Both the position numbers and the translations under genes were made by a program. Below, piece after piece: positions 4,945 to 49,304 of a DNA stretch of 64,000 nucleotides. Numbering within the stretch: position 1 is the first letter of the stretch; each line of letters begins with the position of its first letter. Under the pieces are notes generated by a model that saw only the letters and a list, made by a program, of their open reading frames with translations, did not search any database and was not told the origin of the DNA. The DNA is from Podarcis pityusensis (lineage: Eukaryota), in assembly GCA_964106645.2 (NCBI GenBank), contig OZ067041.1, one strand, 5' to 3'.

Positions 4945-5202
4945 TGTGGTGCCAGTGTGGTGTAGTGGTTAAGAGTGGTAGTCTCGTAATCTGGGGAACT
5001 GGGTTCACGTCTCCGCTCCTCCACATGCAGCTGCTGGGTGATCTTGGGCCAGTCACACTTCTTTGAAGTCTCTCAGCCCCACTCACCTCACAGAGTGTTT
5101 GTTGTGGGGGAGGAAGGGAAAGGAGAATGTTAGCCGCTTTGAGACTCCTGAAGGGGAGTGAAAGGCGGGATATCAAATCCAAACTCTACTTCTTCTTCTT
5201 CT
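4945..5202 (+). mobile_element. tRNA-derived squamate SINE (Squam3-like)
   Basis: A-box-like TGGTGTAGTGG, B-box-like GGTTCACGTCT, conserved body, (CTT)n tail; a second copy lies at 49041-49304. Confidence 0.8.
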
Positions 5203-7846: not shown

Positions 7847-7852
7847 TAAATC

Positions 7853-8315
7853 TTGACCATTTTGGTTGCCCTCCTCTGGACAACCAAAATGGTCAAAGGT
7901 CTGGAGACGATGCCTTATGAGGAACGGCTAAGGGAGCTGGGCATGTTTAGCCTGGAGAAGAGGAGGTTAAGGGGTGATATGATAGCCATGTTCAAATATA
8001 TAAAAGGATGTCACATAGAGGAGGGAGAAAGGTTGTTTTCTGCTGCTCCAGAGAAGCGGACACGGAGCAATGGATCCAAACTACAAGAAAGAAGATTCCA
8101 CCTAAACATTAGGAAGAACTTCCTGACAGTAAGAGCTGTTCAACAGTGGAATTTGCTGCCAAGGAGTGTGGTGGAGTCTCCTTCTTTGGAGGTCTTTAAG
8201 CAGAGGCTTGACAACCATATGTCAGGAGTGCTCTGATGGTGTTTCCTGCTTGGCAAGAGGTTGGACTCGATGGCCCTTGTGGTCTCTTCCAACTCTATGA
8301 TTCTATGATTCTATG
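7853..8315 (+). mobile_element. CR1 LINE 3' fragment with short 5' inversion
   Basis: ORF2 C-terminus YEERLRELGMFSLEKRRLRGDMI...FHLNIRKNFLTVRAVQQWNLLPRSVVESPSLEVFKQRLD; (ATTCTATG)n tail. Confidence 0.93.
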
Positions 8316-13523: not shown

Positions 13524-15714
13524 TAGATATAAAGCCAGAAACTACAGAGGAAAAATAAATAAATGCATTTTAGAATGAAATGTTCTTAAAAGCACAGTGT
13601 AAATGTGTGTTTGCTCTTTATGGTGGTTCTCTAAGCTGTCAGTATAAACTATATTGAATGTGTAGTATTAAATATGGCACCATAAACACACCAAACTATC
13701 AGGAAATAAAAAACTGCTAACAAATTGTGTAATAAATCTGCAGTATTAATTTTTAGTCATGAGACTATTGCTTCTATAACTTACACTGTGATCCCATACA
13801 AGTCTTCTCACTCAGTTCTTACTGCTGGGTAAGTCTTACTTGCAGGTACATTGGCATAGGACTGCAGCCTTAATGTTAATATTATGCCTTTGTGCATATG
13901 TAAAGGGTGTGTGTGGAATGATTTTATCTCTCCGTGGCTTATCACAGTCATTATTTTCTTTCGTGAAACAGGCATTTGCAAATATTCCTCACTGTAATTT
14001 TTTTCTGAAGCCCTAAATTTGTCTTTAATCTACTTTTGAGCTAGTTTGTCAGATTTTCTTTTAAGATAAAAAAATAAGCCAGATTGACTCAATGTACATG
14101 TTTTGAAAGTTTCTATGCCTATGTAGCATTTCTGAGCAGCTGTTTGTTGAGTTGCTGTGGGTGAAGACTTATTTTAACCTGTCCATAGTGCACTTCCTTA
14201 TATATTTGCTTTTTTCTCTAGTACCATAATGTGTATTGTAGGATCCCTCACTATGGTATTTTTTGTTCTTTGTTAAAAGTAGATATAAATCTTGAAGCTA
14301 CTCTATTTTCTCTGCTTTAACTCGTCCTTTTCTATTTTTCTATTTTCTTTTTAAAATCTAACTTGGCTCCCTGTTGCTTTTAAGCTAAGTAACAATGCAC
14401 CAGGCAGAATTTTATCTGAAACATTCTATAGTGAAGATAACTGTTTTTCTTCATAGCACTGCCTATTTTTTAATTGCAAACACTTCAGAGGATGGCTGAG
14501 AGAAAGTTCCTTTGTTGGTGCCTTTTTGAACCTATGCAGTTCCGTTGATCCTTTCTCTAAACCAAGTGTGTCTTTCTAGCCACATGCCAAAATCTTCAAA
14601 TAGTGTTTATCATCAAATAATGTCATGGGGGGGGGGAATTATGGCTGCAATTCCCCCCCCCACACACACACACAATTTCCCCAGAGTACCAATGCATGAT
14701 CCACCAGAGGGGAACGGGGGGGGGGGGGGAGCAACTGCTAAAAGGAACGCCTGCAGGTACAGTACTCTTTTAACTTCAGCCCCCAAATTGCCAAAATATT
14801 TGCTGCCTGTTAACCGTGAAGTGAAAATTGGCATGGTTTAGCCAAGACATTGTTTATGTATCAAGCATGACCGTCTTATCCATAGGCACTAGGGGTGTGG
14901 GGCACCCGGGTGCCGGGCTCTCAGGGGCACCAGGCTGAGAGTCCGGGGCCCAAGAGTTGAGTCCGGGGAAGAGCCTGCCCGTCGGTCAGGGTGTTGCGAT
15001 GGGCTCTTTTGCTACTCCTGTGAGTTTGGGAGCGACCAAGCCAGCGAGGCGCTGAGGCAGTTGGCTGGCTCCGCCAACCTGTGTACCTGAGACTGGGCAA
15101 CCCGGGGGGGGGGAGCACCAGACGGATCTTTGCACCTGGGATCAAGGGCTAATTTTTATTCTTCTAGATTCCAGAAAACATATATAGGGTGATATTCAGT
15201 TGTGTTGTCCCACTTCTGCTTGTGCAAACAAGACTTACCCTTTGTTTCCCTTTACCCAGACCCTCACATGCTCCAGAGGGTTGGGAGGCCCTCTGAAGTA
15301 GATTCCCAGCATGTGGGAGGCTACATTGGGGAGCCAGCATCTGCTTACTCAGAGCTGGATCTCACCCTTTTGTTTGCTTTCCTTTTTTAAAAAAAGGCAG
15401 TAAAAGATCTAATTAGATCAAATTTTGTTTTGTATATTAATTTTGAGGTTAGGGTGTACCTCATACAATTATCCATAAATACGTTGTATATCTTGGTACC
15501 ACTGATCACACGGGAATGCTTTGCACAGGCATGTACTTAACTTCATTTATCTACACTTAATTACTGGCAGCTAATTGTGCAGAAAGCATTGTGTTTGAGG
15601 CAATACGTATTGTGATGGCAGATACGTACATCGCAGAAATTTGAGGGAAAGCGGCATGTCTTGAATGCAGCTACCTTCCCTTGTACAACCATCAGACTGT
15701 TTCTGTCTTGCGTT

Positions 15715-16246
15715 GTTGTTGTTGTTTAGTTGTTTAGTCCTGTCCGACTCTTCGTGACCCCATGGACCAGAGCACGCCAGGCACTCCTGTCTCCCACTGC
15801 CTCCCGCAGTTTGGTCAAACTCATGCTGGTAGCTTCAAGAACACTGTCCAACCATCTCGTCCTCTGTCGTCCCCTTCTCCTTGTGCCCTCAATCTTTCCC
15901 AACATCAGAGTCTTTTCTAGGGAGTCTTCTCTTCTCATGAGGTGGCCAAAGTATTAGAGCCTCAGCTCCAGGATCTGTCCTTCCAGTGAGCACTCAGGGC
16001 TGATTTCCTTAAGAATGGATAGGTTTGATCTTCTTGCAGTCCATGGGACTCTCAAGAGTCTCCTCCAGCACCATAAATCAAAAGCATCAATTCTTCGGCG
16101 ATCAGCCTTCTTTATGAACCAGCTCTCATTTCCATACATCACTACTGGGAAAACCATAGCTTTAACTATATGGACCTTTGTCGGCAAGGTGATGTCTCTG
16201 CTTTTTAAGAAGCTTTCTAGATTTGTCATTTCTTTTCTCCCAATAA
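15715..16246 (-). mobile_element. BovB (RTE) LINE, 5'-truncated 3' fragment
   Basis: Translates to LKSRDITLPTKVHIVKAMVFPVVMYG...WCWRRLLRVPWTARRSNLSILKEISPECSLEG and SLEKTLMLGKIEG...WRALVHGVTKSRT; (CAA)n tail; TSD GTCTTG(C/G)GTT at 15705-15714 and 16247-16256. Confidence 0.93.
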
Positions 16247-18504
16247 GTCTTGGGTTACTGTCACCCAAATCTAACTCCTCCTCCCCTGTGGCTTGGCTTG
16301 GCCTGAAGCAGGTTGAGCGGCAACCTGGTCCAAACCTTTAAATTCCTGTCAACAGGCTTTAAGGGGCTCCCTGCCCCCACCCTCATCTCATGGGACATCT
16401 GGATCCAGTGCCACCAGTAGATACTTTCTAGTAAATATAGCAGTACTGCTCCTAGCCACTCTGCAAGCCATTTGGTAGCTACAATAACTGCAACTGCAGC
16501 CTCTGTGCCACTGCCTTCAGAATTTCTCACCAAGTCAGTCATCCTACTGAAGCCCAGATACCAAGTGGAGGTCATTCAAGTTTGGACCCTGGACATGAGC
16601 TAAACTGAACCAAACAACTAAGTAACTTGAGACTTAGGCTCATGTGGATTTTAGTCCTGTCCCTCTCTATAATAGCAGGATATTTGTAAGGGTACCTTTT
16701 CACTATTTTGAAGGGACCATTTTGCTTCTTTTGTAACAACCTTGAATTTTAGGGCCAGTCTATATATTACATTATCTTGGGTCAGGAATCCTGCAGCCCC
16801 TACACTGCAGCTGTAATGTGCAACATGACTTGCCAGTCACTAGGGGAATTTCAGCACCAGCATTTGGATGTTTCAGAAGCATGTAAATTCTCCACAAAGT
16901 CCCAAGTTTCTCATGGAAAGGTGAGGCCTTGTGCAGGAGTCTTCAGTGATAGAGAATAGTTAAGTAAGTAGACTGCTGCTTACAGCTTGGTGGCTTTCTA
17001 ATAGTATATAGTATTTCCACTTAGTTGCCTAATATAACTTAAAGAGATCATTTTAGGGTAAAACAAAGTGTTCTGTTCACCATTAACTAATTTTTTGCAG
17101 TCTCTCTTGAACTAGAATTTGGGGATTTCAGTTTAATGAGTCTGGATATTTCAGCTTATCATACTAGGCTAGTCTATCAATTTGAGTAAAGCTTTTATTA
17201 TTACATTACATTTTTAAATTAAAGATGGCAGATTTGATCTGCCATTTATGGATCAACTATTTCAAGCTTATTGAATTTAAGTAATAAAGCATTCATAGCT
17301 AAATAAATTACCATTTGCTTGGGTATAAAGAGCCATGAAGGATATATTGCCCTATCCAAACTTACTGTGAGAAATTAATTGATTCAAAATGGCTGCAGTA
17401 TTGTATATTTTAATTTAATTTGCTGCTACCATTTTACTGCAAACAGGCGATAACCAAAATGTAAATGGGATGCAATAGTCTGGTAACAGGGAGCATATTT
17501 TTGTTACATTTTGCAATTATTGATCAGACATAAAAAATAGGACATATACCTTGACATTGACATAAAACATTCACAACATCTAAAAGGCTTATAGGTCATC
17601 TTGGTGTGAATTTTATTTTATTTTATTTTTTTTGGATCTAGTATTGATGGTAATAGTTGGGGGGAGACTGTATTTGGGCTGTAATATTTAATTACAATTG
17701 CTTGTTAGTCTACTAAAATCAGTGGCATGTTTCATGTGTTAGCACTGCAGTCCCACTGCTGCATAAAGAGCATTTTTCATTGTGAACTGCATATTGTACT
17801 GGGCACAAATTCGTTTCTAGATCATGTGGGACACCCAGAACATGGGGATATTTTCCAGTACTAAATCTCCATCAGGGTCATTGAAACCGGTATGGAAAGC
17901 CGAAACATTATCCAGGCATCCCATTAATCTCTGCATTCAAGTGTGACTAACCCCAGGGGAGGTTCTTTCAGCACCCACTCTGTATCATCACCAGCATCAT
18001 TTTTGCAAAATACAACATTGCACAAACAGACCAGCTCACATACAGTAATGGATTTCACCTTCCTCTGTTCCTACCTGCAGTCTCCCATTGCCACAAACAT
18101 ATGCTCCAGGGGCTCCACCAAGTCCCCTTTGGCAAACTTTCAAGTGGGGCAAAAAGGGGGGGGGAGAGAGAAAAGGGAAATTGTTTTTTTTGTGGAGGGG
18201 TGGAATAAGTTAAATTTATTACTTTTGAGGGGGAGGGTGGAAACCCAGTAGCTCCTTTTTGCATAGGGAAGCTCAGCTGTGTGCATTACACACTGCATAG
18301 GTTTTCTGGATAGGAAAAACATGTTAAATCATAAAATATTTCATATATGCTGTGGCGGACCTTGGTGTCTCAAATGTCAGTAACACCCTATGCAACCAAA
18401 TCCAGCACCCCTTGCCTCTCGCCTTCCATTGGATATGATAGTTGTGCTCCCCCTCCCCCCAAAGCTCTACACCTAGTGTGACCACACTGGTTGTGCTCGC
18501 CTAT

Positions 18505-19215
18505 GTGTCCTGGATACGTCCAAGGTCAGGCCACTGGCACCAGCTGGATTTGATTGTCACTAGGCAATCGGTACTGAAGTGTGTTCGTGTCACATGGTGC
18601 TAACACAGTGCCAAATGCAACACAGATCACTCCCTGGTACTGAACAAGATCCTTCTCCAGCCAAAGAGGACCCATAGCACAAAGCAGCAAGTGCCGCTTT
18701 GAATCAACACTGCCAGAACAGTCATAGCTGAACTCTTGATTCTGTCCAACATGCACTACAGAGACAGCATTGAAGCAAGGTGGAACTTCATCAAAGAGGA
18801 AACCAACAACACGGTTACATCCTCTTTTGGAAAAAGAGGGCACAGATATCCGACAGTTTGAGGCTGGCATTAAGGACATGGAGCCAGTTATCACTGTAAA
18901 GCAAAAGGCACTTGTGAACTACAAGTGTGCACCCTGTCAGAAGATGCTTACTGCACTGAGAAAGGCAAGGAGAGATGCCCTTGTCAGGCAATATGCTAAT
19001 GACTACTGGCTAAAGCTGTGTCAGAGCATTCAGCTTGCTGCTGACAGCAGCAACACTCGCAAAGTCCAAAGGCATGAAGGCAGCTTTTAGACCAATAGTC
19101 AAGAAAACTGTACTGCTGAAAACCTTGTCTGGAGAGATCATCACAGACTGCAACAAGCAGTTGAAGCAATGGGCAGAGCACTAGCAAGAACTGTACTCGT
19201 GGGAAACCATCAGAG
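18505..19215 (+). mobile_element. Degraded RTE-clade LINE internal fragment (end of endonuclease and linker)
   Basis: VSWIRPRSGHWHQLDLIVTR...CNTDHSLV (APE C-terminal motifs) and YANDYWLKLCQSIQLAAD...GEIITD...QWAEH, with frameshifts and stops. Confidence 0.7.
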
Positions 19216-20368
19216 CAGAGGCTACTCTGACTGCAAGGATAGGGAAGAGGTGTTGCCCATTATTGACCCCAGAGAGGGGCCCAGTGGGAGCTGGCCAGTG
19301 ATGTCAGAGTAGTGATTCCAATGAGTCATTAAAGGTGGAGAGTCCTGGGAAGAGACCAACCCCATCCCGCTGGGCACCACTCCAGGGTCATCCATGGGCA
19401 ACACCTTTCTCCCGATCTGACCTGCATCATCATGGCATCACCTTGGGGCCCATGACAAACAGCTGATTAATGCTGTCCAAGTTGGCACTACTGATCATCA
19501 GTTTTGTTTGAGAACTGGCTTTGTGAGCACATGTGTGTGTAATTGAAGTAGTATTTTTTTCCTGTATTATAACTTGGATTACACAGGATCTCTTTGGGGG
19601 CTTAAAATTCGCAAAGTGATGTGAATAGATTTGGAGGAGCATAAATTTGAATGGCAAGTTTTAAAAGTACTCTGCAATCTTGACTACTTCAATCAGAAAC
19701 CATAATTTGTGTATTATTGTAATGAAACAGAATCTTCTGTGTTAAAGAACAGGACCTATTTATACAATCAGCAGAATCAGGTGGTAAAGCTTTTCACAGA
19801 TTGCAAGACTTCAGGTTGCTGATGGGAGAACGCTCCCCAAAAAACTTCTTCAACAGTGATGAGAAGCACATGAAGAAAGAATCAGTACAGTCTTCTCCTT
19901 GAGTTTTTTATGAGGGATATACAGCCTGAAGTGATACAGTCCAGTTGATTATCATGTGATTCTACTAATCATGTTACTTCATTCTGCGTTTGACAAAATG
20001 CAAGTTACACATTTTTGTTCATTCTTATCCTGGAGACATATTTTAAAATATAGTTTCACTTTACCATTTGATAAGCTAAAATACCATTTTAGAAAAAAAT
20101 GTGAAAATATTGCAGCAACCTTAAAATAGTTAAGTTTATTTTGCTTTTTTTGTTTGAGCCCAAGTACTGATTTGTCTCCACTGCCATTCCAAATAACAAC
20201 TCCCATTTCATTACTGTGATTTAAATTACCCAGAGACCTGAACGATTCTCTGCATCATTTTTAATGCTAAAGTTAAACATGTTCCATCTATATTTATGCA
20301 TACTTTGGATTTGCATTTTTATAAGCAACTTCTATTCTACTGGAAAGTGGATCAAGACACTGCGTGTA

Positions 20369-28287: not shown

Positions 28288-28410
28288 ATTATTGTTGTTA
28301 TTTAGTCATTTAGTTGTGTCTGACTCTTCGTGACCCCATGGACCAGAGCACGCCAGGCACTCCTGTCTTCCACTGCCTCCCGCAGTTTGGTCAAACTCAT
28401 GCTGGTAGCT
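28288..28410 (-). mobile_element. BovB LINE, short 3'-terminal fragment
   Basis: Near-identical to 15715-15835 (ATSMSLTKLREAVEDRSAWRALVHGVTKS). Confidence 0.88.
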
Positions 28411-31102
28411 AGGGGAACACTGTGGTTTATTTGCGCATACTGCATATACAATCTGAGTCTACGATGGAGAGGTTTCCAAGAGGGTCTCTTGCTTTCCCGT
28501 AGGCACAACAGCCTTGGATTAAAATCAGAAATCAGACATGTGTTCTGTCTCCTTCTTACAGCCTGTCCCAGTTTTTGCCAGCGCATCACTGCCAACTTTC
28601 ATCCTAAAAATTCTGTCCTTTTGTCTCCTACTTACTACCTCTCTAGAGGAAGGAGGGGCTCACACCCCCACTGCTGTCCAGCACAAAGTAACTGCTTTGT
28701 TAATCACCCACCTCCCTTCCCCCCTTGTTTCCATAATGACTCGGTTATTAACAAGCTTTGCTCCCCTAATAACCCATAACAAACTGATGAGCGATCACCA
28801 GGTTGGCCTGCCTTGTATTTTTAACTTAAGAGATTTGTAATGGTTTAACTTCCCAAATCTTGATTAAGTCTACTTTTTATTGGACCCAGGAATTTAGGGT
28901 GTCACACACCCCATAAACTGTTAACAGTATCATGGGTTGGTTTGCAGTGTTGCCACAATGCATTGGAAAATCTGGTAAGTGCCTTCTGGACAACATTTCC
29001 TGACTGCATTTCCTAAACATGCAAAACCAAACCAAAATACACTTGCATAAAACCTTTGCCTCTAATATAATCAAAAAGAAATCCATACAGTTTTTCTTAT
29101 AAGGAGCTAATGCCTACTATGGGCTGTTTAGTTTTCAAAAGCATCCATGCTACAGTAACATTCAACAGACTTCCAATCTTTAATGGCAAATATATAAACT
29201 ATTACTTACTTAAAATCAAAGAGCTTGAAGGAATGTCAGGTATTGTCTAGGTACATACAAATGCAGAGACAGGATTCCCTGTAATTAAGCCTTCTCTGAA
29301 AGAACACTCCTTGGCATGTCTTTAAAAATATTTCTTATAGGAGATTATCTGTGGGCCACTATGTTATATGTTACTCTTGGATTCAGAGTAAATGTGCAAG
29401 ATTGTATATGGAACAAGTACTTAGGGTACCAACATTGGAAGGGAGGAGGATGGAACTTCTAGTTGACTTGAATATGCACCTCAGAGTGCTTTGTGTAGCA
29501 TATCGTGCACTACAGCATCTTATATTTTTTGAGTTATAAGCTTCAATAAAAAAAATTCAAAAAAGAACCAATTCTAAAAACAAAAATGAGGTGAGCAGCA
29601 TAATTTATAAATACTATGCTTATAGAGGCACCATTTGGGTATGTGTATTTTGCCTCCAGCCAAACAGACACATAGGCTGTACATGTACACATCGTTCATA
29701 ATATTTTGGAAATGCTTTCTTTGTGCAAAAAACAAGAGAGTGGAAAATAAAAAGTAGCAGAAAAACTCTGGCTTCATTAACTTATTCTTCAACAGTATTC
29801 ATCAGTTCTTACTTGTATTGAGAAACATTTGCTAATTGCCACCTTACCATTCCTATAGGTCAGATCCACTGCCTGCTGCTTCTCTCTGTGGCAAAGACTA
29901 AAAACAGTGAATTCCATTATCTTTAGTGCAGTTCTTTAAATATTTGAAAGTAGATCTATCCTCATTTCTCATATTTAATGTAGTATTAACATATTTTAAA
30001 AACTTCTCTTTCATTTCTTCATGGATGTGTTTGCACACATAGTCAGTGAATCCCAAGTCATGGACCCGACTGTACATTTGTGGTCAATAATGGCTATAAA
30101 TGGTGAGTTTGGGTCTAACCAGGCATTCTGAAGGCATTCAATATTTGTCTTAAATTGAATTATCCATTGTTTCCAATTCCAAGTAATCATAGATGAAGCC
30201 AAACTTTGGTTCTTTATGCATGTCCAAATTTGTTCTTTTTGGATTTAGTGAGACTAAATCCCTGCCACCTCCCTTCCAAACATTATTCTTTAGAGAATTA
30301 TGTTTGCATTTCAAATAAAAAATGTATTCAGTATGTTCGACTAACTTAGCACATGCTTTTATAGTATCTTTCTGCCTTCTCAGCTTTCTGACAGATAATA
30401 AGAGATTGTGGGTTATATATTTGTTTATTAACATTGCTATTCAAGTTGTACCACTAGAAAAAAAATGATATTATGTCTGCTTCTGTTGTACATTTATAAG
30501 GGTGAAATGCTCCTCTTGTGAAATTTTGTCATCTGTAAAAGCTGCTACTGTAGAACAATGAGAAATTGACATACTTTATATTGAGGTCTGTTCTGACTTT
30601 AAACAGACACGTGCATAGTATTGGAACACAGTTATTGTTTTTGTAAACCAAATAATGTATTTTGGAGCTTGCTTACATGTGTATTTTAAATAGGCAACAC
30701 TAATTAGACAAGTTACAGAATCTAATTTAAGTTTTGGGAAATAGGAAGTATGCTGCAAACATTGTGCGCAAGAACTATGAATAAATAGCTGCACTTGTAA
30801 TTCCTACTAGCAGGGCACATTTGGAGGACATGAACATACAAAATAAAGAAATTCTAATTTGAGTATGTTGGAAAGGCAGAGCTGTGTGAAATCTATATAC
30901 TTATAGATATTTTTAAAACTTTATTTTGATGTCTCTAGGGCTGCCTTTTTCAACCTTCGGTCCACAGATGTTGTTGTAGTTCATCAGGGGACCCAATATT
31001 GAGAAAGGTTGTTATAGTGTATGTAGATATGCATGCAAACAACTTTTATTCCATTTTCCTCAGAACAATTGCACAGCAAATATGAAAAGCTGTAAAAGTT
31101 AG

Positions 31103-31864
31103 TGTCAGAGCTGCTTCCAGATCCTAGCTCACAGAGGATCACGCTAGCCAGCGATCATTAAATAAAAGTCTTTATTGAGTTACAGTTTCCATTCTCAAGC
31201 TGCTGCGTGCAACTCTACGTCTCATGGTTAGATCGGCGAAACTCCATCTGAGTCTCCGCCCCTTGTACACCAACTTAATATCCTAGCCTTGCTCCACCTT
31301 TTCCGCCTGACTGTTCTTCTCTGGGTCCCTCTGCCCCCCGGGGTCTCTTCCTTCCGGGATTCCTCTGACGCTGACGCTGACCCCCCTGACTCTTCTCCCT
31401 CCTTTCGGCGGGCTTTAGGACCTGGCTCCCTTTCCGGGCTGCCTACTGCGCCACCTTCCTGTGCATTTGAACTTGGCACGCGCGCCCAACCTTCCACCTT
31501 CCGTCTGACCGTTTCTTCGCTCCCCGATGGAGGTGTGGCCACTCCTGACTCGTGCCCTCCCCCCTGTTGTGAGCTGCCAGCGCTTGATCCCTGGCGCCCT
31601 TCCTCTTCCCTGCTCTCTGGCGGTGACGCTGGTCCTGATTTCCAACTGCTCCCCTCTGAGTCCCCTCTGGCTCTATCTTCCTGGGGTGTCCCCCTAGGCT
31701 CCCCCCTTGCCCTGGCCACTGGTGCTCCTTTCTGTGAATCTTCTGATTCACTGGAAAGACTCGGAGATCTCGGGTCGTCGTCATCACTCATCTTTTCTTC
31801 TGCCTCCTCTCCCTCGCTCTCTGTTTCCTCCCTTGCCCTTGCCTCTGCTCCTGAACCCCTGACA
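31103..31864 (-). repeat. 3' LTR (762 bp)
   Basis: Identical to the 5' LTR by visual comparison except A31241 vs G37052; preceded on the minus strand by the polypurine tract. Confidence 0.97.
31171..31176 (-). terminator. Polyadenylation signal of the retrotransposon (3' LTR)
   Basis: AATAAA on the minus strand about 50 nt after the pol stop and about 70 nt before the LTR end; copy at 36982-36987. Confidence 0.75.
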
Positions 31865-34800
31865 TCCATCCCCCCCTCGAAGCCCCCTCTTCCCCCCTCC
31901 CCTCCTTCCGGTGCGGGATCTGGGTGCTGCCGTGTCAGGGGGACGAATGTCGGATACAGTTCGCTTCCCGTGGCGGGCCGCCATCCGAAGTCTTCCGGTT
32001 CTTCCTCCCTGCTCTCGTTGACGACGGTCACCTCCGCTTCCATCTCTGTGCCGCCGTGCTCGAAACCCGGGTCGTCCCCGAAAACGTCCATGTCCGTCTC
32101 TCCCTCGTTGCCTTCTGGAGACGTTGCTCGTCCTGGACCCTCCAGCCACCTTCTGCGGAACTGCTCCTCTGGTCGATCATCCCACCAATACGAGGGTTCT
32201 GAAGCAGATCCCGAGGGTGACCCCTCTGGGGAACGGGCGTCTCGTGTTGGTTCCTCGTCCGAGTCGAACCCCCGGAACGTGCTGGCTGAAAGCGTGGGCG
32301 TGAAAAGCCAGTCGTCGAAAAAGTCTGCTGGCATTGGCCTATGTGGGAAGAGGGCATGAAACTCTTCTTTGAGCAGAGGTTCGTCTAAAGCGTAGCCCGG
32401 CACCCAGCTGTTGGCACTGGCCGGGGTGCCCTCCTTGGCGAGAAGGTATTCTACCCCCTCTTCCCCCCATCTGGAGTCCAAAATCTCCGTGACTTCGTTG
32501 ATGCGCTCCTCCTGTGCCACTCCCCCTTGCCCGGTTCTCTCTCGGAGTGGACCCGGTGCCGTTCCTGGTTCCTGAAACCTGTGAGGTGCCTTGTAGGGAG
32601 TGAGCACCGATCTGTGGAACACCGGATGCATTCTGGAACCCTCCGGAAGAGCCAGCCTGAAAGCCACCGGGTTGACCTGTTCGTCGACTTGGTAGGGCCC
32701 CAGTTGTTTATGCCCTAGTTTCTTCTTCGCCAACGACCTGGCCGGCACTGCGTGGGCTGCTAACCAGACCCAGTCTCCCACATGGATCTCTTCGCCAACC
32801 CTTCTGTGTTTGTCCGCTTGTACCTTGTATGCGTGTTTAGCCAGCTCCAGGTGCCGCCGCAGCTGATCGTGGACCTCCTGCAACTCCGACGCGAACGCAT
32901 CTGCTGTCTGCGGCTCCCCCTCCCCCATTCTTTCCAGTCCCGGGAAGGTTCTAGGGTGCCTCCCGTTGTTGGCGAAGAACGGCGTGACCCCCGTGGACAC
33001 GTGCTTCGTGTTGTTGTAGGCGAACTCGGCGAGAGGCAGGTAATCCACCCACGTCGCAGGCTGTTGATTCGCATAACATCTCAGGTACTGCTGCATGATG
33101 GCATTGACCCGCTCCGCTTGCCCGTTGGTCTGCGGGTGTCTAGCCGACGCCAGGTTGATCTTGACGTTCAGGAAGCCCATCAGCCTCTGCCAGAAGTTTG
33201 AGATGAACTGTCGCCCTCGGTCGGACAGAATAGACCGCGGCAGACCGTGAACCTTGAACACGTGGTCTATGAACAGTTTGGCGGTTTGTTCCGCCGTGGC
33301 CACCTTTGCACACGGAATGAAATGTGCCATCTTGGAGAACAAATCCACCACCACCAGCACAGCCGTCTTGCCCCTCGAGCTGGGCAGATCCGTGACAAAG
33401 TCCAGGGCCACTCTCTCCCATGGCTCGAACGGAGTTTGCAGCGGTTCCAGCAGTCCGGCCGGCGGTCTGTGCACTGGTTTGGCCCTCTGGCAGGTGTCAC
33501 ACCTCGCCACGTAGTCCGCGACTTCCCCTCTCATTCCGGGCCACCAGAAGTCTCTGGCTACTAATTCCACCGTCTTCTCCTTGCCAAAGTGCCCGGCAGT
33601 GGGCGCGTCGTGCAGCTGCTGCAGTACCTTGGCGCGAAGTTCGTCTCCCGGCACGTAGATGGCCCCTTTACGGATGAGCAAACCATCTCGCAGCTGGAAC
33701 TCGTCGGTCGCTGCCGTGCCCCTGTGCACCTCTGCCATCTTTGCTTGCGCGAAGGAGTCATCCTGCAACGCTCGTCGCACCGCATCCAGGTCAACTGTTG
33801 CCGCCGCGCACGCCCACACTGTCGGTGCGAAGATGTGCATGGCGGCCGCTGGCGTTGCCTCCTCCAGATACTGTGGCTTACGGGAGAGAGCATCCGCCAT
33901 GATGTTGGTGTCCCCCGGGACATACGCTATTCGGAAGTCGAAATTCGCAAAGAACTCAGCCCAACGTATCTGCCTCTGGTTCAGGAACTGTGCCGTGCGC
34001 CAGTGCTCTAGATTCTTGTGGTCCGTGCAGACCTGCACCGTGTGCTTGGCGCCGATCAGGAAGTGCCTCCACGCTTTGAACGCTGCATGAATGGCCAGCA
34101 ACTCCCTGTCCCAGATGGTGTAGTTCTGTTCGGACTTGCTGAGCTTCCTTGAGTAAAACGCTCCCGGCCTCCAAACCCCCTGCGGGTCTTTCTGCAGCAG
34201 GACTGCTCCCACGGCTCTGTCCGAAGCGTCTGTCTCCACCCTCATCGGCCTGCTGGGGTTGACATGAAGCAGCTGCTCTTCCGACGCGAAGAGACGCTTG
34301 AGTGCCTGAAAGGACTGCTCCGCCTGCTCTGTCCAGATGAACTTCTTTTTCTTGGAGCTGAGCGTGTCCGTGATGGCCGCTGTCTGCATGGCAAAGCCTT
34401 TGATAAACTTGCGATAGAAGTTCGCGAAGCCGACAAACCGTTGGACCTCCTTCCGGTTGCGTGGGCTTTTCCAATCCAACACTGCTCGGACCTTGGCGCT
34501 GTCCATGGCGAGCCCTTTATCAGACAACTTGTAGCCCAGGAAATCCACCTCCGTCACGTCGAATTGGCACTTCTCCAGCTTGGCGTAAAGCCTATGTTGC
34601 TGTAGCCTGCTCAGCACTTCCTTGACGTGTCTGTCATGCTCCTGCTGCGATTCCGAAAAGATCAGGATGTCATCCAAGAAACAGACGCACGTCTTGTAGA
34701 GGAGCCCCGCCAACACGTGATGCATGAAAGCTTGAAAAACGTGGGAGCCATTTTGCAATCCAAAAGGCATAACTCTATATTCGTAGGTGCCCAGGGGCGT

Positions 34801-35799
34801 GAACATGGCTGTCTTCCACTCATCTCCCTCCCGCATGCGAATGAGGTTGTATGCCCCTCGCAGGTCCAACTTGGTGAACACTCTGCCCTTCCGTACCTTT
34901 GCGAGGAGGTCGTCGATTCGGGGCATGGGGAAGTCCGATGGCTTGGTCACACTGTTCAAGATGCGAAAGTCCACTACAAGTCTTTTTTGGGGCGTGTCCC
35001 GCTTCTTAACAAAGAATACCGGACTGCCCCCCGCTGCCTTGGACTCTCGGATGAAACCGCGCTCCAAATTATGATCTATGAACTCTTTGAGTTCCTGCAG
35101 TTCGTCCTCAGACATGGAATACAGCTTCCCTTTGGGCAGCGCCGCCCCCGGCAGCAGGTCAATTTTGCAGTCATATGGTCTGTGGGGGGGTAGCCTGTCT
35201 GCCTCTTTCTCGCAGAAAACCTCCAAAAATTCTGCGTACTTGTGGGGAACCGCTTGCAGCGTGCCTAGCTGCAGCTGTGACTCCTCTTCCCCTCCTTCCT
35301 GCCTGGGCACGATGCAGTGTTCAGCGCAAAAGGAAGAGCCGAAGGTCAGCTGCCTCTGGTACCAAGCCAGCGTCGGGCTGTGCTTGTCCAGCCAACTCAT
35401 GCCCAATACAATGGGCGTGTCCGATAGTTGAGTGACATTGAAGCTGATGATTTCCCTGTGATTCCCAAGTCGCATCACCATTGGTGGCGTCTGCTTCACC
35501 ACTTGCCCCCCTAGCAGCTCCCTGCCATCCACCGTGACAACCTGCAGGGGCAGCGTGGCAGGCAGCAACTGTATAGCGTGCCGGTCGACAAAGTCCTGCC
35601 CTATAAAGTCCGCATTGCTTCCGGAGTCAATGGTGATTGGCACATCCATGGTGATTCCATTGGGCAGCTGGAGCGACGCGGTGAGCCTCACTACCGGTTT
35701 GGGCGGGAGGGGGTCCATGGGCTGTAAAATCTCTGGGGACTGCTTCACTGACACGTCTGGCTGGGCCCCAGTGCCTCTTCCTCCAACCAGACTCCTTCG
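31228..35799 (-). CDS. pol: Pol (expressed as ~1860-aa Gag-Pol via -1 frameshift): protease, RT, RNase H, integrase, degenerate chromodomain, 370-aa C-terminal extension
   Basis: Uninterrupted frame. PR ITIDSGS; RT KLDLRGAY, MPFGL, FLDDILI; RNase H ETDASD, DHKNL, ADALSR; IN LHDAPTAGH...CDTC and LDFV...SDRG...QAERVN; GPY motif; chromo-like EVTEILDSR...EYLL...SWVP...EFH. Confidence 0.95.
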   Translation of the reverse strand, partial: RRSLVGGRGTGAQPDVSVKQSPEILQPMDPLPPKPVVRLTASLQLPNGITMDVPITIDSGSNADFIGQDFVDRHAIQLLPATLPLQVVTVDGRELLGGQVVKQTPPMVMRLGNHREIISFNVTQLSDTPIVLGMSWLDKHSPTLAWYQRQLTFGSSFCAEHCIVPRQEGGEEESQLQLGTLQAVPHKYAEFLEVFCEKEADRLPPHRPYDCKIDLLPGAALPKGKLYSMSEDELQELKEFIDHNLERGFIRESKAAGGSPVFFVKKRDTPQKRLVVDFRILNSVTKPSDFPMPRIDDLLAKVRKGRVFTKLDLRGAYNLIRMREGDEWKTAMFTPLGTYEYRVMPFGLQNGSHVFQAFMHHVLAGLLYKTCVCFLDDILIFSESQQEHDRHVKEVLSRLQQHRLYAKLEKCQFDVTEVDFLGYKLSDKGLAMDSAKVRAVLDWKSPRNRKEVQRFVGFANFYRKFIKGFAMQTAAITDTLSSKKKKFIWTEQAEQSFQALKRLFASEEQLLHVNPSRPMRVETDASDRAVGAVLLQKDPQGVWRPGAFYSRKLSKSEQNYTIWDRELLAIHAAFKAWRHFLIGAKHTVQVCTDHKNLEHWRTAQFLNQRQIRWAEFFANFDFRIAYVPGDTNIMADALSRKPQYLEEATPAAAMHIFAPTVWACAAATVDLDAVRRALQDDSFAQAKMAEVHRGTAATDEFQLRDGLLIRKGAIYVPGDELRAKVLQQLHDAPTAGHFGKEKTVELVARDFWWPGMRGEVADYVARCDTCQRAKPVHRPPAGLLEPLQTPFEPWERVALDFVTDLPSSRGKTAVLVVVDLFSKMAHFIPCAKVATAEQTAKLFIDHVFKVHGLPRSILSDRGRQFISNFWQRLMGFLNVKINLASARHPQTNGQAERVNAIMQQYLRCYANQQPATWVDYLPLAEFAYNNTKHVSTGVTPFFANNGRHPRTFPGLERMGEGEPQTADAFASELQEVHDQLRRHLELAKHAYKVQADKHRRVGEEIHVGDWVWLAAHAVPARSLAKKKLGHKQLGPYQVDEQVNPVAFRLALPEGSRMHPVFHRSVLTPYKAPHRFQEPGTAPGPLRERTGQGGVAQEERINEVTEILDSRWGEEGVEYLLAKEGTPASANSWVPGYALDEPLLKEEFHALFPHRPMPADFFDDWLFTPTLSASTFRGFDSDEEPTRDARSPEGSPSGSASEPSYWWDDRPEEQFRRRWLEGPGRATSPEGNEGETDMDVFGDDPGFEHGGTEMEAEVTVVNESREEEPEDFGWRPATGSELYPTFVPLTRQHPDPAPEGGEGGRGGFEGGMDVRGSGAEARAREETESEGEEAEEKMSDDDDPRSPSLSSESEDSQKGAPVARARGEPRGTPQEDRARGDSEGSSWKSGPASPPESREEEGRQGSSAGSSQQGGGHESGVATPPSGSEETVRRKVEGWARVPSSNAQEGGAVGSPEREPGPKARRKEGEESGGSASASEESRKEETPGGRGTQRRTVRRKRWSKARILSWCTRGGDSDGVSPI
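31865..31878 (-). promoter_or_regulatory. Polypurine tract (plus-strand primer)
   Basis: Minus-strand GAGGGGGGGATGGA directly abuts the TG of the 3' LTR; further G/A runs extend to about 31909. Confidence 0.9.
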
Positions 35800-35805
35800 T
35801 TTCCC
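35733..35805 (-). promoter_or_regulatory. Programmed -1 ribosomal frameshift signal (G GGA AAC plus predicted H-type pseudoknot)
   Basis: Heptamer at 35805-35799 in the gag frame (CAG GGA AAC); the -1 frame is pol (GKRRSLV). A 6-nt spacer precedes the 10-bp stem GTCTGGTTGG/CCAGCCAGAC; loop CTGGGG can pair with CCCCAG at 35738-35733. Confidence 0.88.
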
Positions 35806-36821
35806 TGCTGTGGTTGTCCTTGCTGCGTTGCTGCAGTTACCATTGCTGAGGCTGCAGTGTGCTTGTGGAGCCTCTGGGGACACTCTTTCGCCATATGCTG
35901 TGGATCATCGCAGATGTAACACTTCCTGTTCCCTCTAGGAGGCTTCGCTTTCACTGCTGCCGGTGCTAGGGCTCTGGCTGCTGACTGAGCCCTTGCACCT
36001 CCAACCTCCATAGGTTCCGCTCCTCCTCCTGGCGGAGGCGTGGATTGCGCACGCGCTGCTTCTCTGGGAAGGAAGGAGGAGCCCCTGGCTGGTTCGCGCC
36101 CTCCACGCCCTTCGTCCCTGCTCCACGGACGTCCTTCCAGCCGCACCCCCACCGCCAGCGCCCTCTGAACGATCTCCTGCGTGGTCCGGGGTTTCTCCCC
36201 CCTCGCAATTTCATCTTTAACCGAGCCGTGCAATCCCTCCCAAAACAGGTCTCTTACAGGAGCCGAATCTCTGTCCCATTCCAGGGCACTGACCAAAGCG
36301 AAAAAGCGGGCATGGTACTGCCTTACGCTGGCCCTCCCTTGCTTCAGTCCATGTATCTCCTGCCGAGCAAGATCCACGTCAATGCTTGATAAAAAGCACC
36401 CATCCATCGCTTTAATAAAGGCATCCGCATTTTGGAGCGCCGGATCCTTATCTCTCCACAAATTGCGCAGCCATGCTTTAGCATCTCCATGCAAATGGGA
36501 CATGATGAATCCCACCTTCTCTTGCTCATCTCTAAAGTCTTTGTTCAGCAGTTGCAGTGCACACATTACATCTGCTCTAAAGTTGGGGTACTGTTGCAAA
36601 TTCCCATCGAAGTGAGAGACCAGACCGCCTGTTCGTCTCCCCAACCCAATCCCCTCCGGTTTGGGTGTCAGTTGCCCTTGCTTCGTAAGCACTTCCAACC
36701 TGACCTGGAGATCCCTGTAGGCGGCAGCTGCGTCCTCCTCTCTCTTCCTGGATGCAAGAGCCTCGGCATTCAGTCGTGTCACTGCTTCTCTGAGTTCCAC
36801 TATCTGCTGTTCGGCCGTCAT
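35745..36821 (-). CDS. gag: Gag (358 aa from first ATG): coiled-coil N-terminus, retrotransposon capsid domain, CCHC zinc knuckle
   Basis: ATG at 36821 (GACAACATGA, A at -3). Capsid-like FDGN...KVGFIMSHLHGDAKAW...LKQGRASVRQYHARF...FWEGLHGSVKDE; EPMEVG motif; knuckle CYICDDPQHMAKEC (CX2CX4HX4C). Confidence 0.93.
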   Translation of the reverse strand: MTAEQQIVELREAVTRLNAEALASRKREEDAAAAYRDLQVRLEVLTKQGQLTPKPEGIGLGRRTGGLVSHFDGNLQQYPNFRADVMCALQLLNKDFRDEQEKVGFIMSHLHGDAKAWLRNLWRDKDPALQNADAFIKAMDGCFLSSIDVDLARQEIHGLKQGRASVRQYHARFFALVSALEWDRDSAPVRDLFWEGLHGSVKDEIARGEKPRTTQEIVQRALAVGVRLEGRPWSRDEGRGGREPARGSSFLPREAARAQSTPPPGGGAEPMEVGGARAQSAARALAPAAVKAKPPRGNRKCYICDDPQHMAKECPQRLHKHTAASAMVTAATQQGQPQQGNEGVWLEEEALGPSQTCQ

Positions 36822-36901
36822 GTTGTCTGCCGTTCGTGAGCTCGCTAGTAGGCACCCGCTTTCTCTCCTCTCCGCGAGGACGTAGATGCCCACAATCTAG
36901 G

Positions 36902-36913
36902 GATGGAGCTTAC
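36902..36913 (-). promoter_or_regulatory. Primer-binding site, non-tRNA (self-priming type)
   Basis: Sequence after the 5' LTR reads GTAAGCTCCATC with no TGG; AAGCTCCATC is the exact complement of LTR sequence GATGGAGCTT at 37059-37050. Confidence 0.75.
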
Positions 36914-37675
36914 TGTCAGAGCTGCTTCCAGATCCTAGCTCACAGAGGATCACGCTAGCCAGCGATCATTAAATAAAAGTCTTTATTGAGTTACAGTTTC
37001 CATTCTCAAGCTGCTGCGTGCAACTCTACGTCTCATGGTTAGATCGGCGAAGCTCCATCTGAGTCTCCGCCCCTTGTACACCAACTTAATATCCTAGCCT
37101 TGCTCCACCTTTTCCGCCTGACTGTTCTTCTCTGGGTCCCTCTGCCCCCCGGGGTCTCTTCCTTCCGGGATTCCTCTGACGCTGACGCTGACCCCCCTGA
37201 CTCTTCTCCCTCCTTTCGGCGGGCTTTAGGACCTGGCTCCCTTTCCGGGCTGCCTACTGCGCCACCTTCCTGTGCATTTGAACTTGGCACGCGCGCCCAA
37301 CCTTCCACCTTCCGTCTGACCGTTTCTTCGCTCCCCGATGGAGGTGTGGCCACTCCTGACTCGTGCCCTCCCCCCTGTTGTGAGCTGCCAGCGCTTGATC
37401 CCTGGCGCCCTTCCTCTTCCCTGCTCTCTGGCGGTGACGCTGGTCCTGATTTCCAACTGCTCCCCTCTGAGTCCCCTCTGGCTCTATCTTCCTGGGGTGT
37501 CCCCCTAGGCTCCCCCCTTGCCCTGGCCACTGGTGCTCCTTTCTGTGAATCTTCTGATTCACTGGAAAGACTCGGAGATCTCGGGTCGTCGTCATCACTC
37601 ATCTTTTCTTCTGCCTCCTCTCCCTCGCTCTCTGTTTCCTCCCTTGCCCTTGCCTCTGCTCCTGAACCCCTGACA
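36914..37675 (-). repeat. 5' LTR (762 bp)
   Basis: Direct repeat of 31103-31864 (offset 5811); TG...CA ends; lies upstream of gag on the minus strand. Confidence 0.97.
37086..37091 (-). promoter_or_regulatory. Candidate TATA-like box of the LTR promoter
   Basis: TATTAA on the minus strand, an isolated AT-rich spot in a GC-rich U3, starting 32 nt upstream of the predicted self-primer/TSS (~37059). Confidence 0.55.
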
Positions 37676-37975
37676 GTTAGTAATAGACGTTATGGAATTT
37701 TGTAACAGTAAGGGGAAGAACTCTGGTAGTTGAAGTGGTATTTATGAACAAATGCTCATCTTTGTGGTATATCAATCAATATACAGACAGAATGCTACTC
37801 ATCTATTGCCTGTCTCAAAGGCCTTTGTAGCTCACATGCTTAGTATTAGTGATTTTCTTCCTCAGGTGCAACGGTGCACACATTTGGAGGCTTTGTTTCT
37901 ATAGGAGTGGTTAGAGCAAACATAATACGTTCTGTTGTACTGCATCTGTTGTCACCTTCAATGGCTATAAACGTA

Positions 37976-41478: not shown

Positions 41479-42142
41479 TGGGATGCTATAACAGAAATGG
41501 ATGAATATAATCGCCCCATCCACACTTACCAGGTATGTAATGTTATGGAACCCAACCAGAACAACTGGCTTCGTACAAACTGGATTTCCCGTGATGCAGC
41601 TCAGAAAATTTATGTGGAAATGAAGTTTACACTGAGGGACTGCAACAGCATTCCATGGGTACTGGGAACATGCAAGGAAACATTTAACCTCTACTACCTG
41701 GAATCAGATGAATCCCATGGAATTAAATTCAAGCCAAACCAGTACAGTAAAATTGATACTATTGCAGCTGATGAGAGTTTTACTCAGATGGATTTGGGTG
41801 ATCGCATCCTTAAACTGAACACAGAAGTTCGTGAGGTGGGACCAATAAACAGGAAAGGATTTTTTCTTGCTTTTCAAGACATTGGTGCGTGCATTGCTTT
41901 GGTCTCTGTCCGTGTTTACTACAAAAAGTGTCCTTTCACTGTTCGGAATTTGGCTATGTTTCCTGACACTATTCCAAGGGTTGATTCTTCATCTTTAGTG
42001 GAAGTACGAGGTTCCTGTGTGAAGAGTGCTGAGGAGCGGGACACTCCAAAATTATATTGTGGAGCAGACGGGGATTGGCTTGTGCCTCTAGGACGATGCA
42101 TCTGCAGTGTTGGGTATGAAGAAGTGGATGGTTCCTGCCACG
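41479..42142 (+). CDS. EPHA6: Ephrin type-A receptor 6, internal coding exon (exon 3: ligand-binding domain and start of Cys-rich region)
   Basis: Acceptor ttttcttttcag at 41478|41479 and donor CACG|gtaag at 42142|42143; 664 bp, phase 0 to phase 1. Translation [73 protein letters not shown]...[36 protein letters not shown]. As recalled, [17 protein letters not shown] and TIPRVDSSS mark the EphA6 paralogue. Confidence 0.93.
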
Positions 42143-49040: not shown

Positions 49041-49304
49041 GAAGGAGGAGGAGGAGGAGGAAGAGGAGGAGTTTGGACTTGATAGCCCACCTTTCACTCC
49101 CTTTAAGGAGTCTCAAAGCGGCTAACAATCTCCTTTCCCTTCCTCCCCCACAACAAACACTCTGTGAGGTGAGTGAGGCTGAGAGATTTCAGAGAAGTGT
49201 GTCTGGCCCAAGGTCACCCAGCAGCTGCATGTGGAGGAGCGGGGAAGTGAACCCAGTTCGCCAGATAACGAGTCCACCTCTCTTAACCACTACACCACTA
49301 CTGG
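49041..49304 (-). mobile_element. tRNA-derived squamate SINE (Squam3-like)
   Basis: Reverse-complement homologue of 4945-5202 (near-identical spurious ORF translations); (CCT)n tail. Confidence 0.8.

What the first reader, a model, noticed from the sequence alone, without database searches (positions are those of the whole stretch)
32060..32340. Integrase tail carries acidic FxGF and D-x-F-G motifs resembling LEDGF-IBD/TFIIS-N-domain-binding motifs: candidate new integration-targeting module
Seen: immediately after the chromodomain, Pol reads DFFDDWLFTPTLSASTFRGFDSDEE (FRGFDSDEE at 32277-32251) and later ETDMDVFGDDPGFE (DVFGDD at 32088-32071). Both sit in acidic, disordered-looking sequence with CK2-type sites (SDEE). 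Established: host partners of the LEDGF/p75 integrase-binding domain and other TFIIS N-terminal domains (MLL1/KMT2A, PogZ, CDCA7L/JPO2, IWS1, SPT6, LEO1) use acidic FxGF and/or [DE]-[ILV]-F-G motifs. MLL1 reads roughly FLGFGSDEE (from memory). HIV integrase uses LEDGF to target transcribed genes. Inference: this element may mimic those motifs to tether integration to elongating chromatin, replacing its cage-less chromodomain. Its position inside a gene fits but is a single data point, and such short motifs can arise by chance.
Basis: partly seen in the sequence, partly recalled or inferred. Interest (0 to 1): 0.85.

Follow-up and report, generated by a model that had tools for sequence, protein, structure and literature searches.

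The report
Lizard retrotransposon mimics LEDGF-binding motif
A family of wall-lizard jumping genes carries, on the tail of its integrase, a short motif built like the one host proteins use to grip LEDGF (the chromatin anchor HIV uses); it is conserved, but binding and any effect on where the element inserts are untested.

Summary
Both motifs are in the sequence. They lie in the Pol tail of an intact, very young Tf1/Sushi-type Ty3/Gypsy chromovirus (762-bp LTRs, one mismatch) in an EphA-receptor intron of a lacertid lizard. The FxGF is the end of a TND-interacting-motif (TIM)-like unit: an F-bearing helix (32328-32302), an 8-residue linker, then FRGF. That unit is under purifying selection (pN/pS 0.21, flanks 0.4-1.0). 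It sits in register, +20/21 after the chromodomain, in subfamilies only 51-56% identical, where the linker is acidic and matches the published D/E-x-E-x-F-x-G-F; several carry two copies. It is absent from 230 outgroup tails. A profile of the element motifs ranks the LEDGF-bound MLL1 and JPO2 peptides first and second among 177,635 PDB sequences (E about 1). The same clade has lost the chromodomain aromatic cage. Limits: this copy has a Ser/Thr linker and misses the strict consensus; no binding was tested; six other insertion contexts do not point to active genes. Best reading: a LEDGF/HRP2-binding mimic, probably an integration tether. I found no earlier report in a mobile element.

The parts
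36914..37675 (-). 5' LTR, 762 bp, TGTCA...TGACA
   Evidence: one mismatch to the 3' LTR
37676..37680 (.). target-site duplication CTAAC (upstream copy)
36902..36911 (-). self-priming site: 10 nt complementary to LTR position 617-626 (37059-37050), the Tf1/Sushi hallmark
   Evidence: 11-nt match in three P. lilfordi copies
35745..36893 (-). gag ORF (capsid, CCHC knuckle); overlaps pol in another frame, slippery GGGAAAC at 35805
31228..35883 (-). pol ORF, 1551 aa: PR-RT-RNase H-IN-SH3-chromodomain-acidic tail
32593..32778 (-). integrase C-terminal SH3 (Tf2-1-like, GPY/F) domain
   Evidence: Pfam PF24626 E=8.7e-15
32332..32499 (-). chromodomain lacking all three aromatic-cage residues, still under purifying selection
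32302..32328 (-). TIM-like helix, Pol 1186-1194; its last F is invariant in all 12 motif copies aligned
32278..32301 (-). 8-residue linker, Pol 1195-1202: 5 Ser/Thr and no D/E here; acidic in sister subfamilies
32266..32277 (-). FxGF (FRGF), Pol 1203-1206; F, G, F fixed, x free (Q, R, H, E, I, V, K)
32251..32265 (-). acidic flank DSDEE with a CK2-type serine; same as the MLL1 peptide flank except one residue
32071..32088 (-).
31865..31878 (-). polypurine tract, also read as protein
31103..31864 (-). 3' LTR; pol reads about 211 codons into it
31098..31102 (.). target-site duplication CTAAC (downstream copy)
41479..42142 (+). host EphA-receptor internal exon; the element lies 3.8 kb upstream of its acceptor, antisense, i.e. 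in the preceding intron
   Evidence: the paralogue looks like EPHA6 (my recollection, not tested)

Best explanation
The integrase of this lacertid chromovirus clade carries, right behind a cage-less chromodomain, a mimic of the host TND-interacting motif (TIM/IBM). An F-bearing helix and the FxGF would dock into the two pockets of the LEDGF/p75 or HRP2 integrase-binding domain, and the linker would face its basic patch. LEDGF/HRP2 read H3K36me2/3 through their PWWP domain, so they would tether the intasome to that chromatin, as they do for HIV integrase but through the host-type interface. In the window's subfamily the acidic linker is replaced by Ser/Thr, so binding is probably weaker or phosphorylation-dependent. 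Shown: motif anatomy, conservation, protein-level selection, clade restriction, cage loss. Inferred: binding (about 0.75 for the acidic-linker subfamilies, 0.6 for this copy), that the tail stays on mature integrase, and that the purpose is target-site choice (about 0.5 overall).
For: Definition of a TIM: helix + 8-16-residue acidic or S/T linker + FxGF, the FxGF being typical of LEDGF/HRP2 ligands (PMC9987994); consensus D/E-x-E-x-F-x-G-F (PMC8022399). Motif at +20/21 after the chromodomain in 41 of 44 clade proteins; two of the three exceptions keep a second copy downstream, one is frameshifted. Exact strict consensus in P0173, P0009, P0058, P0174 (twice) and P0210, which are 51-56% identical to the window over IN-SH3-chromo. 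Second copy 38-47 aa downstream in P0009, P0172, P0173, P0174, P0008; host partners also carry tandem TIMs. Zero TIM patterns in 230 outgroup tails. pN/pS 0.21 versus 0.39-1.03 in the rest of the internal tail up to the PPT, with synonymous changes in the F and G codons. PDB profile search: rank 1 MLL1 peptide 2MSR, rank 2 LEDGF-JPO2 chimera 5YI9; P0210 alone also ranks 5YI9 first. All motif-bearing elements form one clade (100/100) with 0-1 of 3 cage aromatics, against 3 of 3 in 184 of 194 parsed outgroup domains. Precedent for short host-binding motifs in integrase tails: MLV-BET (PMC5053271), Ty5-Sir4 (phosphorylation-dependent) and Ty1-AC40 (PMC7459421).
Against: No binding data and no complex model. 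The PDB E-values (0.8, 1.1, 1.5) are not significant by themselves, and the profile was built from segments chosen for FxGF. The window peptide alone retrieves no LEDGF ligand. The window linker has no D/E, has S at both acidic consensus positions, and its linker serines lack a CK2 context. Motif gain and cage loss are a single evolutionary event, so their coincidence is n=1. Insertion contexts do not favour active genes: nests of same-clade elements (L083, L085), a V2R cluster (L086), three chromosomal copies with no other called gene within 10 kb (L087-L089), and here a very large intron of a tissue-restricted receptor gene. Many control tails are short (117 of 230 have at least 25 aa) and less acidic.
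Confidence: 0.55

Rival explanations
1. The motif binds LEDGF/HRP2 or another TND protein (IWS1, TFIIS, ELOA, MED26, PNUTS), but for something other than target choice: stabilising integrase, holding it on chromatin or in the nucleus, or boosting transcription of the fresh insertion.
For: All conservation evidence fits equally. The insertion contexts seen give no sign of gene-body preference. The chromodomain remains constrained and could still do the targeting; cage-less type II chromodomains are common in plant chromoviruses (PMC6317226). A fly FxGF partner, JIL-1, depends on the interaction for stability (10.1101/624023).
Against: The position, directly after the chromodomain at the integrase C-terminus, is where known targeting modules sit, and the motif coincides with cage loss.
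Confidence: 0.22
2. It is a functional short motif for an unrelated partner, or an extension that packs back on the chromodomain and fills the lost cage; the likeness to TIMs is incidental.
For: Fixed distance from the chromodomain. In the window subfamily even the linker is nearly invariant, more than a flexible TIM linker needs. Acidic-aromatic motifs bind many domains (own knowledge).
Against: The motif is duplicated further down the tail and P0008 keeps only the distal copy, so it does not need the chromodomain beside it. AlphaFold2 gives it pLDDT<50 with no confident packing (shallow alignment of 12). FFAT, LIR and AP-1 ear patterns (recalled, checked by eye only) do not account for the invariant F-x8/9-F-x-G-F. 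Top PDB matches are LEDGF ligands.
Confidence: 0.13
3. The clade's ancestor had a working TIM, but in the window's long-branch subfamily it has changed partner or is only a weak remnant.
For: Strict consensus not met here; linker not acidic; second copy absent; last cage tryptophan lost as well; branch length 0.71; the window peptide finds no LEDGF ligand.
Against: F, G, F and the helix F are fixed while x varies, pN/pS is 0.21, and the flank matches MLL1 at 7 of 9 residues. S/T-rich linkers are part of the TIM definition, and the distal copies of sister subfamilies also have serines before the FxGF.
Confidence: 0.07
4. Chance pattern in a low-complexity acidic tail, or conservation for a nucleic-acid reason.
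For: FxGF alone has p~0.09 in the shuffled window tail. This rival does hold for DVFG.
Against: In-register conservation at 51-56% protein identity, duplication within the tail, high synonymous divergence across the motif (pS up to 0.74), absence from outgroups.
Confidence: 0.03

Closest known systems
TND-interacting motif / LEDGF IBD-binding motif of MLL1 (KMT2A), JPO2 (CDCA7L), IWS1, PogZ
   Same: Order helix - 8-9-residue linker - FxGF, in disordered acidic sequence; tandem copies; exact D/E-x-E-x-F-x-G-F in sister subfamilies; best PDB matches 2MSR and 5YI9.
   Different: Found in a mobile element's integrase, not a host protein. The window copy has a Ser/Thr rather than acidic linker. Binding untested. 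PogZ is transposase-derived but a domesticated host gene.
Lentiviral integrase - LEDGF/p75 tethering
   Same: Same proposed host factor and same proposed outcome.
   Different: HIV integrase grips the IBD in a cleft between two folded protomers (PMC8149907), not through a linear FxGF motif; unrelated lineage, so this would be convergence.
Integrase-tail targeting motifs: MLV IN - BET ET domain, Ty5 TD - Sir4, Ty1 TD1 - AC40
   Same: Short motif in a flexible integrase C-terminus binding a host chromatin factor; Ty5's is phosphorylation-controlled.
   Different: Different partner and motif; those are experimentally proven.
Tf1/Sushi-group vertebrate chromoviruses (Ty3/Gypsy)
   Same: Gag-pol order, SH3 plus chromodomain, self-priming site, 5-bp TSD.
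   Different: Anolis, Vipera, Rhineura, amphibian and other relatives keep the three-residue cage and have no FxGF unit.

Membership tests
Ty3/Gypsy chromovirus, Tf1/Sushi group | LTRs, TSD, PPT, PR-RT-RH-IN order | tested here: met
Ty3/Gypsy chromovirus, Tf1/Sushi group | chromodomain at the integrase C-terminus | tested here: met
   (degenerate here, below Pfam cut-off; strong in sister subfamilies)
Ty3/Gypsy chromovirus, Tf1/Sushi group | self-priming site instead of tRNA primer site | tested here: met
   10-11 nt complementarity; feature of the group per PMC6317226
Type I (cage-bearing) chromodomain | three aromatic cage residues | tested here: not met
   N, K, T in the window; 0-1 of 3 across the clade
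TIM / LEDGF IBM | FxGF | tested here: met
TIM / LEDGF IBM | short helix with F/V/L/I anchors N-terminal to the linker | tested here: inconclusive
   invariant F plus upstream hydrophobics in all 12 aligned copies; helix modelled at Pol 1186-1192 but at low confidence
TIM / LEDGF IBM | linker of 8-16 residues | tested here: met
   8 here, 8-9 in relatives
TIM / LEDGF IBM | acidic linker, D/E-x-E before FxGF (window copy) | tested here: not met
   S at both positions, 0 D/E and 5 S/T in the linker; would need phosphorylation
TIM / LEDGF IBM | acidic linker, D/E-x-E before FxGF (sister subfamilies) | tested here: met
   P0173, P0009, P0058, P0174, P0210
TIM / LEDGF IBM | lies in a disordered region | tested here: met
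   pLDDT<50 from Pol ~1188 on; prediction only
TIM / LEDGF IBM | F-dependent binding to a TND | not testable with these tools
   no complex prediction or assay available
TIM / LEDGF IBM (DVFG site) | conserved helix anchor placed before an FxGF | tested here: not met
   lies 60 residues after the FxGF; F varies to L/W
Integrase targeting domain | biases insertion toward the partner's chromatin | tested here: inconclusive
   seven contexts, biased sampling, no gene-body signal

The most novel reading that the evidence does not exclude
A vertebrate LTR retrotransposon lineage swapped direct methyl-lysine reading (chromodomain cage) for mimicry of the host TIM, reaching LEDGF/HRP2 independently of lentiviruses and by the host-type interface; in the window's subfamily the tether is switched by phosphorylation of a Ser/Thr linker.
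Probability: 0.4. Interest if true: 0.9.

Novelty: new variant of a known kind. Interest (0 to 1): 0.78.

Why it matters
Lentiviral integrase is the only mobile-element protein listed as hijacking a TND in the 2023 review (PMC9987994). A 2023 fly study speculated about LEDGF tethering of LTR elements but stated that no data supported it (PMC10018349). My full-text searches found no FxGF/TIM reported in a transposon (open-access library only). If the motif binds, this is a second, independent route by which a mobile element co-opts LEDGF/HRP2. It would also suggest what can accompany loss of the cage in chromovirus chromodomains, and it is directly testable with short peptides and with public Podarcis genomes, where the family is young and abundant.

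Tried and rejected
DVFG as a second TIM half: not conserved, wrong order, no relevant PDB match. Window peptide alone against PDB: only chance hits. P0009 tail alone against PDB: only a papillomavirus E1 chance hit. JGI metagenome scan: 80 distant loci at 28-36% identity, none from this clade, not used. Anolis tails have an acidic ENLGF inside the LTR-encoded part; no first F, so rejected as a TIM. The two FxGF hits in control tails (P0018, P0118) lie in sequence that looks like non-element parts of chimeric gene models and lack helix and linker. The degenerate Zootoca copy P0028 was left out of both clade counts and controls. BLAST gave 766-bp LTRs with two mismatches; this over-ran the ends, the true figure is 762 bp with one mismatch. 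The primary TIM papers (Tesina 2015, Sharma 2018, Cermakova 2021) were not held, so definitions come from reviews. L087 contains 100 N, left as they are.

Full report
Observation. The ORF belongs to an intact Ty3/Gypsy LTR retrotransposon: gag, then PR-RT-RNase H-integrase-SH3-chromodomain, 762-bp LTRs at 37675-36914 and 31864-31103 with one mismatch, a CTAAC target-site duplication, a PPT, and a 10-nt self-priming site typical of the Tf1/Sushi group (PMC6317226). The closest proteins are from Podarcis muralis and P. lilfordi, so the host is a lacertid lizard, not human. The element lies antisense, 3.8 kb upstream of an internal exon of an EphA receptor gene.

What defines the motif. A TND-interacting motif (TIM) is a short helix with hydrophobic anchors, an 8-16-residue linker rich in D/E and often S/T, and an optional FxGF that all known LEDGF and HRP2 partners carry (PMC9987994). 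In MLL1 the helix (F129, F133) comes first and the FxGF (F148, F151) second; the published consensus is D/E-x-E-x-F-x-G-F (PMC8022399). Read that way, the window has helix candidate Pol 1186-1194, an 8-residue linker and FRGF. AlphaFold2 models a helix at 1186-1192 in an otherwise low-confidence tail.

Chance. In the window alone the case is weak: FxGF appears in 9% of shuffles of the internal tail, the helix-plus-FxGF pattern in about 0.1% (pattern defined after seeing the data). The evidence comes from relatives.

Conservation. Of 44 clade proteins with a readable chromodomain end, 41 have FxGF at +20/21; F, G and F are fixed while the x position takes seven residues. Many of these are near-copies; there are about five independent lineages. 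The exceptions are one frameshifted copy (P0006) and two that keep a distal copy (P0008, P0172). Four sister lineages, 51-56% identical to the window over IN-SH3-chromo, carry the unit with an acidic linker, and P0173, P0009, P0058, P0174 and P0210 match the strict consensus exactly. P0009, P0172, P0173, P0174 and P0008 have a second unit 38-47 residues further on. Across 12 aligned units the only invariant columns are the helix F and F-x-G-F. In 230 outgroup chromovirus tails (15.6 k residues; Anolis, Vipera, Rhineura, amphibians, others) no TIM pattern occurs; many of those tails are short, which weakens this control. Against the two most divergent same-subfamily copies, pN/pS is 0.21 over the unit, 0.18 over the chromodomain, 0.39-1.03 over the rest of the internal tail up to the PPT and 0.54 over the DVFG stretch. 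Synonymous changes in the F and G codons show the constraint is on the protein. DVFG varies to DMFG, DVLG, DVWG, NTLG and NILG within the subfamily and has no counterpart outside it.

Likeness to LEDGF ligands. A 26-position profile made only from element sequences, searched against 177,635 PDB sequences, returned three hits at E<10. The first two are the MLL1 peptide of 2MSR and the JPO2 part of the LEDGF-JPO2 chimera 5YI9 (E 0.8 and 1.1). P0210 alone also ranks 5YI9 first. These E-values are not significant and the profile was seeded on FxGF. But at the background rate of 4.7e-4 per residue, many thousands of PDB sequences should contain FxGF (inference), so the ranking reflects the linker and flanks too. 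The window peptide on its own finds no such hit.

Phylogeny and the chromodomain. All motif-bearing elements form one clade (100/100; 38 rows, P0040 left out for lack of a chromodomain end; midpoint root for drawing only), with the single-TIM P0210 lineage branching first and the window subfamily on a long branch. Outgroups keep all three cage aromatics in 184 of 194 parsed cases; the clade keeps at most one, and the window none. Motif gain and cage loss therefore map to the same branch, which is one event and not a correlation. The chromodomain is still constrained, so it has not simply been replaced.

Mechanism. Most likely the unit binds the IBD of LEDGF or HRP2, whose PWWP domain reads H3K36me2/3, tethering the intasome. 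Short host-binding motifs in integrase tails are established for MLV (BET; PMC5053271), Ty5 (Sir4, phosphorylation-dependent) and Ty1 (AC40; PMC7459421). HIV integrase binds the IBD with a folded dimer cleft instead (PMC8149907). The window's copy departs from the consensus: Ser at both acidic positions and no D/E in the linker, though its downstream flank matches MLL1 closely. Phosphorylation raises TIM affinity, so a switchable or weaker version is plausible; this is inference. I do not file the window copy as a proven TIM: one defining feature fails and binding is untested. It works like one on present evidence, and the sister copies meet every sequence criterion I could test except the helix, which is only predicted.

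Targeting. The only direct evidence is seven insertion contexts, and they do not support a preference for active genes: this EphA intron, a V2R cluster, two nests of related elements and three chromosomal copies with no other called gene within 10 kb. The sample is biased by annotation and by selection after insertion, and the tool may not list spanning genes, so it is inconclusive rather than negative.

Novelty. Searches of the open-access library found no TIM or FxGF reported in a transposon integrase. The TND review names only lentiviral integrase under mimicry, and a fly study states there were no data for LEDGF binding by LTR-element integrases (PMC10018349). Named hosts so far are all Podarcis; the hosts of P0007, P0008 and P0009 are unknown. 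Verdict: a real, conserved feature; a new variant of a known kind (host-motif mimicry in an integrase tail) with a new partner class; binding probable, targeting role about even odds. Interest 0.78.

Noticed in passing
window 31863-31228 (-): Pol reads about 211 codons into the 3' LTR. The same read-through occurs in other subfamilies (P0007, P0008, P0009, P0210), pN/pS is 0.31-0.42, and it ends in a basic NLS-like run followed, in most, by an L-L/I-x-x-W-like patch. The LTR U3 appears to be constrained as protein.
   Followed up: partly
window 32199-32155 (-), Pol 1229-1243: A second aromatic island (SYWWD...PEE.W/F) is conserved only in the window subfamily (pN/pS 0.39), roughly where sister subfamilies have their second TIM; function unexplained.
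   Followed up: partly
window 37052 and 31241: The single difference between the two LTRs falls inside the 10-nt stretch that pairs with the self-priming site.
   Followed up: no
L085:10700-10780 (P0210, P. lilfordi): The basal subfamily's motif is strikingly close to the JPO2/CDCA7L peptide in 5YI9, including the TDSE linker: capture from a host transcript or convergence, unresolved.
   Followed up: partly
L083 and L085: Dense nests of several subfamilies of this element inserted into one another; L083 is about 0.5 Mb from the end of a 30-Mb chromosome.
   Followed up: partly
L086:9174-14757: A two-TIM copy in a vomeronasal V2R cluster, merged with V2R exons in the public gene model P0176.
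   Followed up: partly
window 41479-42142 (+): EphA-receptor ligand-binding exon; no preceding exon found in the 41 kb upstream.
   Followed up: yes
window 15713-16340, 18740-19310, 28289-28423; 7850-8233; 4952-5201 and 49054-49304: Fragments that read like Bov-B/RTE and CR1 LINEs and SINE-type repeats typical of squamates (identification from memory).
   Followed up: no
window 35805-35799 (-): Slippery heptamer GGGAAAC in the gag/pol overlap, suggesting a -1 frameshift.
   Followed up: no
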